Assembly: GCF_032062105.1 (NCBI RefSeq)
Contig: NW_026923961.1
Location: 62,001-126,000, forward strand
Direction: 5' to 3'
DNA: 64,000 nucleotides
DNA from: Saccostrea cucullata
Lineage: Eukaryota
Positions 34,190-39,400 of the stretch are shown here, piece by piece. The position numbers were made by a program, and so were the translations under genes. Within the stretch, counting starts at the first letter, position 1. Every line of letters begins with the position of its first letter. The notes under the pieces are model-generated. The model did not search any database. It saw only the letters and a program-made list of their open reading frames with translations, and had not been told where the DNA came from.

Positions 34190-34793
34190 ACATTAGTGAC
34201 TCTGGTAATGATTTAGAATAATTATGTTGATGTGTTATGATGATTTAGAATGATTATGTTGATGTGTTGTTGATGATTTAGAATGATTATAATTATATTT
34301 AAGTGATGGTTGAAAAGGATTATGTTGTTGTGTCGCTGAAGATATAGAAAATACATGGTTACTGTCTAGAAATTTAAGTGATATTTGGGCGAGGGTAAGA
34401 AAACGTGATAGAGGACGAGGCTTGCCGAGCCTTCTTACGTTTTCGACCCAATCCTATTGGTAATGATGAATGATTATGTAGACGTGTTGATGACGATTTA
34501 GAATAATTATGTTGATGTGTTAGTGAAGATTTTAAATGTTAGAATGATTATGTTGATGTGTTGGTGATTTAGAATGATTATTTTGATGTGTTGGTGATGA
34601 TATAGAATGATTATTTTGATGTGTTGGAGATAATATAGAATAATTATGCTGATGTGTTGGTGATAATTTAGAATGATTATGTTGATGTGTTGGTGATTTA
34701 GAATGATTATGTTGATGTGTTGGTGATGATATAGAATGATTATTTTGATGTGTTGGTGATGATTTAGAATGGTTATGTTGATGTGTTGGAGAT
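34190..34793. repeat. 30/33-bp minisatellite (left part; target of the gypsy insertion)
   Basis: Unit TGATGATTTAGAATGATTATGTTGATGTGTTGG. Confidence 0.85.
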
Positions 34794-36386
34794 TGTCACA
34801 ACTGACCTCAAGTTGTGATGGATTCGTTAAATCAGAATTTACAAACCAAAATAAATAATATTTTGTAAGACCTCCTGTATACCAAGAAACAACAAGATTT
34901 ATAAAAATTAACAATAAATTTATCTACATATGTACAATAAACATGAAAACGGCCAAAAGTTCAATCATGGTCATCACTGAACAGATTCACACTTCACACC
35001 ACGTCGCAATGTATGGTCCACCATATTGTCCCTTCCGGTCCACCATATCCCAAAAGTATCCTCACCATGTACACCAATCCTCCCGTCCAGAACAAAAGCT
35101 TAATATACAATTTTGGTCACCTACAATTTTCATAGGGTTTTCTAATAAAATGTTCGAAACACATATCTGTTCAATATACTAGATTTTACAAACAAATAAC
35201 GAAAGAAAACATGTATTTGCCGTTTAACAAGTAAATGAATTAGAGCGTAAATATCTATATTCTCGCTATATTGCTTACAGTTTTACATAGAAAATTGCTC
35301 TTTAAAGCTAACAACAAAAATATTGTAAAGTATAAAAACTTACTGAGCTGTGGCATTTTATACATAAAAACCATATCTGTCATGGATTTGCTATTCTTCA
35401 AAGAATTTTCCCATATATTTCTATGTAAAAGGTCTTGCTCTCAACGCCGCTACAAAACATCCCTGAATCCCAAGATCACACAGCAGGGGAAACAGCTATA
35501 TAAAACACACCCAAGTTCACACAGCATGGGTTATATAAATGCACACCCAAGATCACTAAGCATGGGTAAAGCATAACTCACAGCGAAAATTTTTAAAGAA
35601 CCTCATCTGACACACACTAGCCAACACCCAGTATAAATAACTGACCAAACTACTCAAACGGATGCTTCCATATAAATTTGATGAATTAGTATACGTTGAT
35701 AAAAATAGAACAAATACAACTCAGTGACCAATAGTGCGTAAATGAAATAAACGATAACTCCTAACGCCCAAAATAAAGATACAATGAAACGCATTGAAGT
35801 GGTAAAATTTTCCGTTCGAATGGAAGGTTTTGAGCTATCTTTAGAACGTTTATTGTCATCTTATGACACGCCCATTTCTTTAGAAATGGACAAATACTGT
35901 CAATTTGTTTATTCGAATACCTGTAGAACAGGTTTCCATAAATATAATAGCCAATGAAATTGTCGGTCTAAATAAACACCGAGTAAACACGTGTTCGACC
36001 GAAACATGTGTTGTGGTAACATCAGTAGACATGATAAGTTCAAAAATATGTACATATGCGTTGCAATTTGAGTTTTACAGAAGCAGGGAGTCTCTAACTC
36101 TCTCTTCTAATTTTTAAAGCTTCATTTTACAGTGTAACTCATATTGCTTTTCATAAAAACCAGATTGGAGTGTCCTAAAACATTGAATTGACACATATTT
36201 TCACACTCGTTATATAAATGCACAAAATATGGGCGTGTCATTATGTTGTAACTGACGTTCAAAACATGACCCAGAATGTTTCGTCCACACGGAAAATTTT
36301 ACCACTTCAATGCACTTCATTGTAATTCTTACCAAATCCTGTACAATAAGCTAATATTAAACATTGACACAATGTCACTTGTGACA
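34794..36386 (-). repeat. 3' LTR (1593 bp including a MITE and three replacement patches)
   Basis: Direct repeat of 41124-42100 with about five substitutions outside the indels. Confidence 0.95.
35782..36322. mobile_element. Tc1/mariner-type MITE (TA TSD) in the 3' LTR
   Basis: TA|CAATGAAACGCATTGAAGTGGTAAAATTTTCCG ... CGGAAAATTTTACCACTTCAATGCACTTCATTG|TA; the empty site AAGATAACTC is present in the 5' LTR. Confidence 0.9.
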
Positions 36387-36400
36387 ATACCTCCCTTCTT
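36387..36400 (-). promoter_or_regulatory. Polypurine tract
   Basis: Minus-strand AAGAAGGGAGGTAT immediately before the 3' LTR. Confidence 0.85.
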
Positions 36401-36471
36401 AAGACACAAAATGCAATTTTGTGACATAAATGAAAAACTATGTACACAACAAAGTCTTTATGAACAAGAAC

Positions 36472-39400
36472 TTACTCAGGAACAACACGACTGAGAAAAT
36501 CAGCTCCAATGTTATCTACACCTCTAATAACTTCAGTTCTAAAGTTGAACGCTTGTAGAAAAAGAGACCATCTCATCAATTTGCTGTTTGAAACTTTAGT
36601 CTTTTGTAAATGAAGTAGTGATCTATGATCTGTCTCCACAACAAACGCTCTTCCATACAAGTAAGACTGAAATTTCTGTATAGCCCATACAACTGCAAGA
36701 CACTCTTTCTCCACAACCGAATAACGTTGTTCTCTGTCTAGCAGCTTCCGGCTTGCATACGCAACTGGAAATGTACGTCCATCATGCTTCTGCATCAGCA
36801 CTGCACCAACTCCATGATTAGATGCATCAGTTCTTAAGATGAATGGCTTCGTCAAATCTGGTAATCTGAGAATTGGGCTGTATAGCAACATGGATTTTAA
36901 ACTCTTAAATGAATTATCATGTTCTTGTTTCCAGTCAAATTTGTTTGGAACACCTTTCTTGGTTAAGTCAGTTAAAGGAGCAGCAATAGAGGAAAAGTTT
37001 GGCACAAATTTTCTATAATAGCCAATCAAACCAAGGAAAGATCTAACCTGCTTCTTTGTCTCTGGCCTTGGTGCTTCTTGGATAGCTCTTAACTTCTTGT
37101 TGGTTGGCTGTAAGGTTCCTCCTCCAATAACATGACCCAAGTACTCAAGTTTCGTCTGCGCTAGCTCACATTTAGATGGTTTTGCTATTAATTGCGCTCT
37201 CTGAAGTCTCTCCAGCACTTTTCTCAGTTCTGTAATATGTTCTTCAAAAGTTTCTGTATGAATGAGAATGTCATCAACAAAACTATCAGTATGCTCTAAA
37301 CCTTTGAGAATTTTCCTCATTAGCCTGTTAAAAGTAGCTGGGCTATTCTTCATACCGAAGGGCATTACTTTAAATCTGTACAAACCATCTGGTGTTAAAA
37401 ATGATGTTAAATCTCTGTCTTCTTCTCTCATCGGAATCTGCCAATAACCCTTACATAAATCAAGCTTAGAAAAGAAACGACTATTGCTTATTTTAGTCAT
37501 GATTTCATCTGGATCTGGCATTGGTTCTGGATCAAAAATCGTTACCTTATTCAAGTTACGAAAATCCACACATATTCTCTGGCTACCATCGGACTTCTTT
37601 GCCACGACAATCGAACTAGCATACGGTGATTCTGATGGTTCGATGATATCCATGTCAATCATATGCTGTATTTCTTCTCGGACTGCACTTCTGACTGCAT
37701 ACGGTATCTGATATGGTCTGTTTCTGATTGGTTCTTTGGTAGTGAGATGAACTTCATGCTGGATAACATTCGTTCTACCAGGTAGATCTGTTAAAACTTC
37801 CTGAAATTCATGTAAGACATCATTAATGGATTCAAGCTGATCTGATGACAGTGAATGATTTACCTTAACATCTGTGAATGATTCTGTTGCCTTCATTGGA
37901 AGAAGATGTAACAAATGTTCATTACTGGAGTCCTCTGTTTCCTCCGATTCCAAAACGACACAAGAGGCTAAAGTTGTTGGCGAGTCTGTATTCCTTTCCT
38001 CTCGAACATTGTATTTCTTCAATAAATTTGCATGAAACAAACGAATATGTCCATTCATATCTATCTGGTAATCAGTTTGTCCTTTTCTATCAACTACTTT
38101 GAAAGGTCCTTTCCACTGCATTAAAAGTTTGTTATGGTCTGTTGGAAGCAAAAGAAGAACGAAATCACCAACCTTGAAAGATCTCGGCTTTGTTCTTTTA
38201 TCGTACTGTTTCTTGTGATAATCTTTGGACTTCTGAAGTTCTCTCTGAGCCAGCTCACACGTTCTTGCTAGTCGCTCCTTAAGGTCAAGCACATACTGGT
38301 AAGTAGTTTTCACTTCCGGGTCCTTCTCCTCCTTCGTCCACAGTTCTTTCAAAACTTTCATAGGTCCCCTAACATTACGTGCATAAACTAGATCAAATGG
38401 AGAAAATTTAGTGCTTTCTTGTGGAACTTCTCGATAAGCAAATAACAATGCTGGTAAATATCTATCCCAGTCTTTTGGTCTTTCAAAACTCATTTTCCTT
38501 AACATTGACTTCAAAGTACCATTGAACTTTTCTACTAGTCCATTACATGCTGGATGGTATGGAGTTGTTACTAATTGCTTAAATGATAAAAGTCGACCCA
38601 CCTCTTTCATGATGTTGGAGGTAAATTGCGTACCCATGTCCGACAGAACTTCTTTTGGAATGCCAACTCTGCTGAATATCTCTACCAACGCTTCTGCCAC
38701 CGTCTCTGTATCGATGTTCTTCAATGCAACCGCCTCTGGATACCTAGTACTGTAATCTACAACAGTCAAAATATATCTATTGCCTTTGTCAGTAATTGGA
38801 GAAAGCGGACCTACCAAATCTACGGCTACCCGTTCAAATGGTGTATCAATAAGTGGCATTTTCTCCAACGGAACCTTCGTCACTTTGCCTTTAGGAAATG
38901 TTCTTTGGCATATGTCACATGATTGGCAATATCTCGTCACGTCACCCTGGATTCCAGGCCAATAGAAATTCGACATGATACGGTCTAGAGTTTTCTTTGT
39001 ACCAAGATGTCCGCCTAGGATACTGTCGTGCGCAATCATCATAACTTTCTGTCGCAAAGGTTCTGGAACAAGAAGTTGTTTATACAGTTTTTCATCACTA
39101 ACCTTTCTTGAATGATAATGTCTGTACAACAGTCCTCTTTCAACACTAAACCATGTCTCTATATTTTCACCAATGTTCTTCTTTCTGCCAGTCGCTGCAT
39201 GCTCACGATACACTTTCAAGGAAGAATCATCCATCTGCAGTTGTTTCATCAGATCAATTGTCATATCAGTATCCACTAAATCTGTAACTTTTAGCTTTTT
39301 CATACCTTTCTCTTCTTTTTTCTTTTGATTCCTTGTCTGTACTGCTTGAAGAACTTGACTACACTCTTCTCTAACGTCTTTTCTACACCACTGTGGATCA

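What the first reader, a model, noticed from the sequence alone, without database searches (positions are those of the whole stretch)
35382..35687. Three separate satellite-matching micro-patches in one LTR of a young retrotransposon
Seen: the two LTRs are nearly identical, yet at three sites within ~300 bp a short GC-rich motif of the 5' LTR is replaced in the 3' LTR by sequence matching the Cg170-like satellite of the HINEs at 57-62 kb, always in the same orientation. (1) GGCCCCC (41711-41717) is replaced by 48 bp at 35382-35429, ATGGATTTGCTATTCTT-CAAAGAATTTTCCCATATATTTCTATGTAAA; the second part matches the reverse complement of ~61628-61658 with one mismatch, and the first part resembles ~61505-61525. 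(2) TCCAG (41870-41874) is replaced by AAAATTTTTAAAGA at 35586-35599; satellite GAAGATTTTTAAAGAA. (3) GTTCGACG (41937-41944) is replaced by ATGCTTCCATATAAATTTGATGAATT at 35662-35687; satellite GGATGCTTCCATATAAATATGATCAAT (~61371-61397 and ~61526-61552, reverse). Each replaced motif contains or abuts a CpG, and the junctions show 1-2 nt of microhomology. Established: LTRs are identical at insertion, so these changes happened later. Inference: clustered templated-insertion repair (Pol theta-like) or repeated template switching onto abundant Helentron/satellite DNA, which would be a route for seeding satellite sequence into, and damaging, an active LTR. A consensus or polishing artefact is the main alternative.
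Basis: partly seen in the sequence, partly recalled or inferred. Interest (0 to 1): 0.8.

Follow-up and report, generated by a model that had tools for sequence, protein, structure and literature searches.

The report
Satellite-copied patches in one LTR
One of the two end-repeats of a young oyster-type retrotransposon has had three short GC-rich motifs overwritten by exact copies of pieces of an unlinked satellite-carrying Helentron element, which looks like a single DNA-copying accident with repeated template jumps, but raw reads could not be checked.

Summary
The element lies on the minus strand at 34794-42100, with TG..CA LTRs and an intact 5-bp target duplication (GAGAT). Its 3' LTR differs from the 5' LTR by three replacement patches within 306 bp.

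With their 1-2 nt junction overlaps, the patches are exact copies (51/51, 16/16 and 29/29 nt) of monomers of one Cg170-type HINE subfamily. That subfamily lies on other contigs, not in the neighbouring arrays at 57-62 kb.

- P1 is the truncated terminal monomer of that HINE. It has at least 55 identical copies elsewhere. Of 78 genomic places holding its first 23 nt, only this one is outside a HINE.
- All 25 other LTR copies aligned carry the unpatched motifs, so the patches are derived and private.
- Five other LTR pairs of the family show nothing similar.
- The replaced motifs are GC-rich (P about 0.0007) and all touch a CpG (P about 0.007). All six junctions show microhomology.

Best reading (0.5): one error-prone repair or replication synthesis tract with three out-and-back template switches onto HINE DNA. 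Rivals are reverse-transcriptase switching when the copy was made (0.15) and an assembly or library artefact (0.25).

The artefact could not be tested. No public run holds the patched form and the junctions are singletons in the assembly. This is a single anecdotal event of moderate interest.

The parts
34794..36386 (-). 3' LTR of the retrotransposon (1593 bp = 977 bp of LTR + 73 bp net from the patch cluster + the 541-bp MITE + its 2-bp TA duplication). Ends TGTCACAA...TTGTGACA. A purine-rich tract (AAGAAGGGAGG on the element strand) abuts it on the internal side.
41124..42100 (-). 5' LTR (977 bp). It keeps the ancestral motifs GGCCCCC (41711-41717), TCCAG (41870-41874) and GTTCGACG (41937-41944). 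It has three private substitutions, all to A, at 41206, 41262 and 41362.
34789..34793 (.). Target-site duplication GAGAT, left copy. The right copy is at 42101-42105. The element sits inside a 33-bp minisatellite (34203-34793 and 42101-42275).
35376..35376 (+). Private 1-nt insertion (+T), 5 nt before patch 1.
35382..35429 (+). Patch 1 (48 bp) replaces GGCCCCC. It is an exact copy of the truncated terminal monomer of a Cg170-type HINE. The identity runs 35380-35430 (51 nt) when the TC and A overlaps are included.
35497..35500 (+). Private 4-nt insertion (TATA) between patches 1 and 2. Its match to HINE is not significant.
   Evidence: other individuals lack it
35572..35572 (+). Private T>C substitution inside the cluster.
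35586..35599 (+). Patch 2 (14 bp) replaces TCCAG. With 1-nt overlaps on each side it is 16/16 identical to a HINE monomer variant (GAAAATTTTTAAAGAA).
35662..35687 (+). Patch 3 (26 bp) replaces GTTCGACG. With the GG and A overlaps it is 29/29 identical to a HINE monomer variant present 282 times in the genome (this locus included).
35782..36322 (.). 541-bp MITE inserted in the same LTR. It has about 100-nt imperfect inverted ends and a TA duplication (35780-35781 and 36323-36324). A private C>T lies 2 nt beyond it, at 36326.
   Evidence: very abundant in other runs
36472..41244 (-). Open gag-pol frame of 1590 aa: SCAN-like capsid, CCHC knuckle, integrase, reverse transcriptase, RNase H, in that order.
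35279..35293 (+). Ancestral 15-nt exact match, inverted, of the LTR to the HINE monomer. It is also present at 41609-41623 in the 5' LTR. It is the only LTR-HINE similarity above chance length.
57277..58415 (+). Neighbouring related HINE: palindrome-bearing end plus a 166-bp array, in the same orientation as the patches. It is not the donor subfamily.
59782..62015 (+). Second HINE: (GTCY)n microsatellite plus a 166-bp array, in the opposite orientation to the patches. It is not the donor subfamily.

Best explanation
After the retrotransposon inserted, one stretch of about 310 bp of its 3' LTR was re-synthesised in a single error-prone DNA synthesis event. This was either repair synthesis after a break or gap (SDSA/BIR-like) or restart of a stalled fork.

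Inferred sequence of steps:
1. Synthesis stalled three times at short GC-rich, CpG-touching motifs.
2. Each time the growing 3' end came off the LTR template and primed on 1-2 nt of microhomology on DNA of a Cg170-type HINE (a Helentron non-autonomous element).
3. It copied 48, 14 and 26 nt respectively.
4. It then returned to the LTR template 5-8 nt beyond the point of departure. The already-copied LTR part of the nascent strand kept it in register while the foreign 3' tail looped out.
5. The +T, +TATA and T>C changes are by-products of the same low-fidelity tract.

Shown: the patches are exact HINE copies, derived, private, of one subfamily, in one orientation, with microhomology at all six junctions, at GC/CpG sites.

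Inferred: that it was a single event, the polymerase pathway, the stalling, and that the DNA is as assembled.
For: - Structure: TG..CA LTRs and an intact GAGAT duplication show one insertion rather than a recombinant of two elements.
- Polarity: all 25 other LTR copies aligned have the unpatched motifs, and contigs of other individuals join 35375 to 35430 through CTGTCGGCCCCC.
- Copying: P1 is 48/48 exact at 55 or more other places; P3 is 29/29 at 282 places, this locus included; P2 is 16/16. Shuffles gave 0/5000, 2/5000 and 0/5000.
- Context: P1 occurs outside a HINE only here, at 1 of 78 places.
- One donor type: P3's variant lies in the same arrays as P1-type terminal monomers in more than half of the listed arrays (by inspection). 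Single elements hold all three patches in the same order and orientation (C3196/L058: 0, +340, +456).
- Replaced motifs: 15/20 GC against 35% for the LTR (P=0.0007), and all touch a CpG (P=0.007).
- Microhomology of 2, 1, 1, 1, 2 and 1 nt at the six junctions.
- Not a general property of this assembly or family: five other LTR pairs show only substitutions and 1-6 bp indels, and 135 kb of other loci show no isolated HINE patch of 25 nt or more.
- Known precedent: repair synthesis is prone to dissociation and template switches at microhomology (PMC12891019), and Pol theta can copy templates in trans (PMC4912351).
Against: - No read-level support. No public run holds the patched words (best share 0.25), and the patched junctions are singletons in the assembly, with no allelic contig.
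- Template switches between unlinked templates in yeast need about 200 bp of homeology (PMC12891019). Here LTR and HINE share nothing beyond one inverted 15-mer.
- Six non-homologous switches in 310 bp is extreme for any described pathway.
- No DNA secondary structure explains stalling (z=0.17).
- That it was a single event is inferred from subfamily, order and orientation. It is not shown.
Confidence: 0.5

Rival explanations
1. Technical artefact. The patches are not in the animal's DNA at this locus. They arose in library preparation, read correction, consensus or polishing, possibly triggered by poor base-calling at GC-rich or methylated CpG sites.
For: - The patched form is a singleton in the assembly and is in no public run found.
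- The patches match one of the most abundant repeats of the genome. Depth over 35368-35431 in other runs is hundreds of times that of the LTR.
- The replaced sites are GC/CpG sites, which are also known trouble spots for some long-read chemistries (my knowledge).
- The source reads and the assembly method are unknown to me.
Against: - No standard mechanism known to me makes 14-48 nt exact foreign segments flanked by perfect local sequence with only 1-2 nt overlap. Graph-based correctors need k-1 overlaps, and majority consensus would restore the canonical LTR (inference).
- The rest of both LTRs is clean, with no stray indels over about 900 bp.
- Five other LTR pairs, 135 kb of other loci and the rest of the window show no such patches.
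- P1 is out of HINE context at only 1 of 78 places, so the assembly has no systematic tendency of this kind.
Confidence: 0.25
2. The patches were born with the copy. During the last plus-strand (strand-displacement) synthesis across the 3' LTR in the virus-like particle, reverse transcriptase paused at GC-rich sites and switched three times to co-packaged HINE RNA or DNA. This left a heteroduplex that was fixed in the patched form. Under this reading the two LTRs were never identical.
For: - The changes are confined to the 3' LTR, the only LTR that such a late error would mark (standard reverse-transcription model, my knowledge).
- Reverse transcriptases switch templates at pause sites and can make 'deletion with insertion' mutations (Pathak and Temin 1990, my knowledge).
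- The GC-rich positions and the microhomology fit pause-driven switching.
- The patches are exact copies with no later decay.
Against: - It needs HINE nucleic acid inside the particle and six non-homologous switches in one pass. No evidence bears on either.
- The patches' lack of decay has no power to date them (88 nt at 0.5% divergence).
- The same LTR also collected a MITE and a further substitution after insertion, so later damage to this LTR is demonstrably possible.
Confidence: 0.15
3. Three independent double-strand breaks, each repaired by end joining with a captured or Pol-theta-templated filler. Each filler happened to come from HINE DNA because that DNA is so abundant.
For: - Each site on its own looks like a classical deletion-plus-templated-insertion scar with 1-2 nt microhomology (PMC5068794, PMC4912351).
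- HINE/Cg170 DNA is very abundant (PMC7492417).
Against: - Three hits in 306 bp of one LTR, and none in five other LTR pairs.
- All three are in the same orientation and come from the same minority HINE subfamily, in an order found in single elements.
- Extra small mutations lie between the patches.
- Pol-theta fillers are normally copied from within tens of nt of the break (PMC5068794).
Confidence: 0.07

Closest known systems
Interchromosomal template switching during gene-conversion repair synthesis in yeast (Hicks/Tsaponina/Haber; PMC12891019)
   Same: A nascent repair strand leaves its template, copies a stretch from an unlinked sequence and jumps back. The junctions lie at microhomologies. 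Frameshifts and substitutions accompany it in the same tract.
   Different: The yeast events need about 200 bp of homeology between the two templates and copy a few hundred bases in one excursion. Here there is no LTR-HINE homeology, the excursions are 14-48 nt, and there are three of them.
Pol-theta-mediated end joining with templated insertions (PMC4912351, PMC5068794)
   Same: A small deletion plus an insertion that is an exact copy of another sequence, with 1-2 nt junction microhomology. Copying in trans is possible in vitro.
   Different: The templates are normally the flanks of the same break or the opposing end, within tens of nt, and each break leaves one scar. Here the donors are on other contigs and there are three scars separated by 156 and 62 nt of intact sequence.
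MMBIR/FoSTeS-type serial template switching (complex rearrangements; PMC13065848, PMC3678771)
   Same: Several consecutive switches in one replicative event, microhomology at each junction, and short templated segments at breakpoints.
   Different: These events are usually described at kilobase-to-megabase scale and leave rearrangements. Here the scale is tens of nt and the locus stays collinear.
Short-range template-switch mutation clusters (PMC5453318, PMC9435742)
   Same: A cluster of apparent substitutions and indels is explained by one brief switch of template.
   Different: Those events copy the local complementary or nascent strand and create inverted local copies. Here the copied text comes from an unlinked repeat family.
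Cg_HINE elements carrying Cg170-type repeats in Crassostrea gigas (PMC7492417)
   Same: The donor has 166-bp Cg170-like central repeats, a palindrome-bearing flank and a (GTCY)n microsatellite flank, and is dispersed in hundreds of copies.
   Different: The paper describes spread of the repeats by transposition of whole elements. Here only sub-monomer pieces were copied into another transposon, without any HINE ends.

Membership tests
Templated insertion / template-switch mutation (generic) | The inserted text is an exact copy of sequence present elsewhere in the genome | tested here: met
   P1 48/48, P3 29/29, P2 16/16. Shuffle controls: 0, 2 and 0 of 5000.
Templated insertion / template-switch mutation (generic) | Microhomology at the junctions | tested here: met
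   2, 1, 1, 1, 2 and 1 nt at the six junctions. The chance that all six have at least 1 nt is about 0.25^6 (my estimate).
Templated insertion / template-switch mutation (generic) | Derived state relative to the ancestral sequence | tested here: met
   25/25 other LTR copies aligned and the sister LTR carry the GC-rich motifs. The junctions are unique in the genome.
Pol-theta-mediated end joining | The template lies in cis, within tens of nt of the break | tested here: not met
   There is no copy of the patches in the LTR or its surroundings. The only local similarity is an inverted 15-mer 89 nt away. The donors are HINEs on other contigs.
Pol-theta-mediated end joining | Dependence on POLQ | not testable with these tools
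   Needs genetics.
Interchromosomal template switching in repair synthesis (yeast type) | Extended homeology (about 200 bp) between the original and the alternative template | tested here: not met
   The longest exact match between the unpatched LTR and HINE DNA proper is 15 nt, inverted. A 17-nt match comes from one locus only (L069).
MMBIR-type serial switching | Several switches made in one event | tested here: inconclusive
   The patches share subfamily and orientation, their order matches single donor elements, and extra small mutations lie between them. Linkage in a population was not testable.
Cg170-type HINE (donor) | Array of satDNA-like central repeats (about 166 bp) between two flanks, one with a terminal palindrome and the other with a microsatellite | tested here: met
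   166-bp arrays. A flank with GGCCCATGGGCC lies 108 nt from P1 in 9/9 loci examined. A (GTCY)n block lies at 59782-59835. SubTIRs were not examined.
LTR retrotransposon, Ty3/gypsy-type domains | TG..CA LTRs, 4-6 bp target duplication, polypurine tract, gag-pol with RT, RNase H and integrase | tested here: met
   The domain order is integrase before RT (see Noticed in passing).
Assembly or polishing artefact | Absent from raw reads of the sequenced individual | not testable with these tools
   No run holds half of the words or more. Only contigs of other samples could be laid.

The most novel reading that the evidence does not exclude
HINE/Helentron DNA is a preferred trans template for stalled repair or replication synthesis in oysters, perhaps because rolling-circle intermediates or its abundance make it available as single strands. 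Satellite sub-monomers would then be seeded into unrelated loci without transposition. Because these patches lie in the upstream part of a 3' LTR (probably U3, not mapped here), any daughter copy would inherit them in both LTRs, giving a route by which satellite motifs enter LTR promoters.
Probability: 0.1. Interest if true: 0.75.

Novelty: new variant of a known kind. Interest (0 to 1): 0.5.

Why it matters
If the DNA is as assembled, this is a natural, polarised record of a complex template-switch mutation in an animal germ line. It shows three out-and-back jumps to an unlinked, non-homologous donor within 310 bp, at GC/CpG sites.

LTR pairs give the ancestral state for free. The same comparison run genome-wide could therefore measure how often repair synthesis borrows text from abundant repeats. 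It could also test whether Helentron-borne satellites are over-used as donors, which bears on how satellite motifs get dispersed.

There is a practical warning too. Such events inflate LTR divergence and break LTR-based dating and annotation.

As it stands this is one unverified event. It shows no function for the host or the element.

Tried and rejected
- Source reads: one search found no run holding the patched form (best share 0.25). Laying four runs showed only Logan contigs of other samples, carrying unpatched LTRs and separate HINE contigs. This says nothing about the sequenced individual.
- Allelic contig: the unique parts of both flanks occur only once in the assembly.
- Second copy of the patched junctions: none in the genome and none in JGI metagenome contigs (uninformative).
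- Neighbouring HINEs at 57-62 kb as donor: rejected. They match P1 only in part (30/31 over 31 nt) and lack the P1-type terminal monomer.
- Recombinant of two elements: rejected by the intact GAGAT duplication.
- Inherited LTR variant: rejected; 25/25 other copies aligned are unpatched.
- 'In register' mosaic of an aligned HINE and LTR, which would point to a consensus artefact: the offsets do not agree. They are 0/+204/+278 in the LTR against 0/+340/+456 in the one examined element that holds all three in this order (C3196/L058), and in another element (L053) the order differs.
- Hairpin-driven stalling: the ancestral segment has no unusual DNA structure (z=0.17).
- The TATA insertion as a fourth HINE patch: not significant (240/5000 shuffles).
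- Link to the MITE 95 bp away (excision and gap repair): possible, but its proximity has no statistical weight.

Full report
ANATOMY.
The window holds a full-length LTR retrotransposon on the minus strand, at 34794-42100.
- Both LTRs begin with TGTCACAA and end with TTGTGACA.
- The element is flanked by a perfect 5-bp duplication, GAGAT (34789-34793 and 42101-42105). It sits inside a 33-bp minisatellite that continues on both sides.
- A purine-rich tract abuts the left LTR on the internal side, and a 1590-aa gag-pol frame runs 41244 to 36472 on the minus strand.
- Pfam finds a SCAN-like capsid, a CCHC knuckle, integrase, reverse transcriptase and RNase H.
- The intact duplication shows one insertion event, not a recombinant between two elements.

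THE OBSERVATION.
The pairwise alignment shows five substitutions in about 957 shared positions (0.5%). All other differences are confined to the left LTR:
- +T at 35376;
- GGCCCCC replaced by 48 bp (P1, 35382-35429);
- +TATA at 35497-35500;
- TCCAG replaced by 14 bp (P2, 35586-35599);
- GTTCGACG replaced by 26 bp (P3, 35662-35687);
- a 541-bp MITE with about 100-nt imperfect inverted ends and a TA duplication (35782-36322).

POLARITY.
A search of the window's own genome returned 46 matching stretches, and every full-length match lacks the extra 73 nt. In alignments, all other copies carry the GC-rich motifs: 14 over the patch region and 25 over the whole LTR. Contigs from three other coded organisms also join 35375 to 35430 through CTGTCGGCCCCC.

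The same alignment polarises the substitutions. T>C at 35572 and C>T at 36326 are private to the left LTR. Three changes, all to A (41206, 41262, 41362), are private to the right LTR. The patches are therefore derived.

Junction-spanning patterns for P1 and P2 occur once in the 1.17-Gb assembly, so the patches are private to this LTR.

WHAT THE PATCHES ARE.
Whole-genome pattern searches change the picture from 'resembles the satellite' to 'is an exact copy'.
- P1 occurs with 0 mismatches at 55 or more other places. In all nine that I read, it is the truncated terminal monomer of a HINE, lying 108 nt from an element end that carries the palindrome GGCCCATGGGCC. Full 166-bp monomers follow it.
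- Of 78 places holding P1's first 23 nt, 77 are preceded by the HINE flank (CCATGATCAATC or a near variant). Only this locus is preceded by LTR sequence.
- P3 with its two overlaps (29 nt) occurs exactly 282 times, this locus included. By inspection, more than half of the listed arrays holding it also hold a P1-type terminal monomer within about 1.2 kb. P3 is thus a variant typical of the same subfamily.
- P2 with one overlapping nt on each side (16 nt) is exact in a monomer variant. That variant occurs 214 times in HINE context.
- Single elements contain all three. In C3196 (L058) they lie at 0, +340 and +456, in the same order and orientation as in the LTR (0, +204, +278).
- The neighbouring arrays at 57-62 kb belong to other subfamilies and are not the donor.

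CHANCE.
- Shuffles of each patch against 196 kb of HINE-bearing loci reached the observed exact match in 0/5000 (P1), 2/5000 (P2) and 0/5000 (P3) trials.
- In the 57 kb of the window outside the arrays, matches to nine HINE copies are 15-16 nt long. The exceptions are the three patches, at 51, 16 and 29 nt.
- In 135 kb of other loci, matches of 25 nt or more occur only inside true arrays.
- Five other LTR pairs of the family differ only by substitutions and 1-6 bp indels.
The phenomenon is therefore far beyond chance, and it is not a general property of this assembly or this family.

SITE FEATURES.
- The 20 replaced nt are 75% GC, against 35% for the LTR (P=0.0007). All three replaced segments touch a CpG (P=0.007).
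- All six junctions share 1-2 nt between LTR and HINE.
- The ancestral segment has no unusual single-strand structure.
- The only LTR-HINE similarity is an ancestral, inverted 15-mer at 35279-35293. It is not at a junction.

MECHANISM.
The data call for a copying process, because the patches are exact text. The process primes on 1-2 nt, leaves and re-enters the LTR within 5-8 nt, prefers GC-rich departure sites, and used one donor type three times within 310 bp while also making three small errors.

The most economical reading is a single tract of low-fidelity synthesis with three out-and-back template switches. Re-entry close to the exit point follows if the LTR part of the nascent strand re-pairs with its template and the foreign 3' tail loops out.

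Repair synthesis with exactly this tendency (dissociation, microhomology priming, frameshifts, excursions to unlinked templates) is documented in yeast (PMC12891019). Serial switching is the hallmark of MMBIR (PMC3678771, PMC13065848). Pol theta can copy in trans (PMC4912351).

The present case differs from each of these. There is no homeology between the templates, unlike the yeast events. There is no template in cis, unlike typical Pol-theta scars (PMC5068794). The scale is tens of nucleotides with a collinear outcome, unlike MMBIR rearrangements. I therefore file it as a new variant of a known kind, not as a member of any one pathway.

RIVALS.
(a) Artefact (0.25). It cannot be excluded. No public run holds the patched words (best share 0.25), the junctions are singletons, there is no allelic contig, and GC/CpG sites are also technical trouble spots. 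Against it, I know of no corrector or consensus step that writes exact 14-48 nt foreign text between perfect local sequence on 1-2 nt of overlap. The surrounding sequence is clean and the assembly shows no such tendency elsewhere.

(b) Reverse transcriptase at birth (0.15). Pause-driven switching would fit the GC sites. However, it needs HINE nucleic acid in the particle, and nothing supports that.

(c) Three independent end-joining scars (0.07). This is disfavoured by the clustering, the common subfamily, orientation and order, and the absence of such scars in other LTR pairs.

LIMITS.
- Full-length relatives could not be fetched, so the internal region was compared only through the HINE word scan.

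VERDICT.
The event is most likely a single multi-switch copying accident that borrowed text from a Helentron-borne satellite. Whether it exists in the animal remains to be shown by reads or PCR.

Noticed in passing
window 36472-41244 (minus strand): The gag-pol frame has Ty3/gypsy-type domains (Integrase_H2C2, rve, SH3_Tf2-1, RVT_1, RT_RNaseH), but integrase (726-1078) comes before RT (1216-1373) and RNase H (1438-1566). This is the copia-like order known from Gmr1-like elements (my knowledge). No protease family was reported at the threshold used.
   Followed up: partly
window 35279-35293 and 41609-41623: Both LTRs hold an ancestral 15-nt exact, inverted match (AGTTTTACATAGAAA) to the part of the HINE monomer where patch 1 ends. 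In the patched LTR this makes a 13-nt inverted repeat with 35417-35429. No role at the junctions is evident.
   Followed up: partly
window 41206, 41262, 41362: The three private substitutions of the 5' LTR are all changes to A (from T, G and C), lie within 157 bp, and all fall in the first 240 bp of the LTR. This may be a second small mutation cluster or chance.
   Followed up: no
window 35782-36322: A 541-bp MITE with about 100-nt imperfect inverted ends (74% complementary) and a TA duplication. It is very abundant in contigs of other runs. It sits 95 bp from patch 3, and a private C>T lies 2 nt beyond its right duplication.
   Followed up: partly
window 34203-34793 and 42101-42275: The retrotransposon is inserted in a 33-bp minisatellite (unit about GAATGATTATGTTGATGTGTTGGTGATGATTTA) that continues on both sides.
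   Followed up: no
window 7040-11914: A 4.9-kb tandem array with a short unit (spacing in steps of about 27 bp, copies 84-93% alike) was seen in the self-comparison.
   Followed up: no
L053-L062 (e.g. L053:1390-1500): The donor HINE subfamily has about 180 copies (178 places within 3 mismatches of P1). Each ends with a 108-nt flank that starts ACAAGAGGCCCATGGGCC, with a perfect 12-nt palindrome. The adjoining monomer always lacks about 15 nt (GAGAAGAAGATTTTT) relative to full monomers.
   Followed up: partly
L004 and L007 (contig C10835): Two LTR copies 11.7 kb apart differ by large blocks: 371 extra nt at one end, and 43-nt versus 19-nt replacement blocks. They may be two different elements or a rearranged one. 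The blocks were not compared with HINE beyond the word scan, which found a true HINE array next to L007.
   Followed up: no
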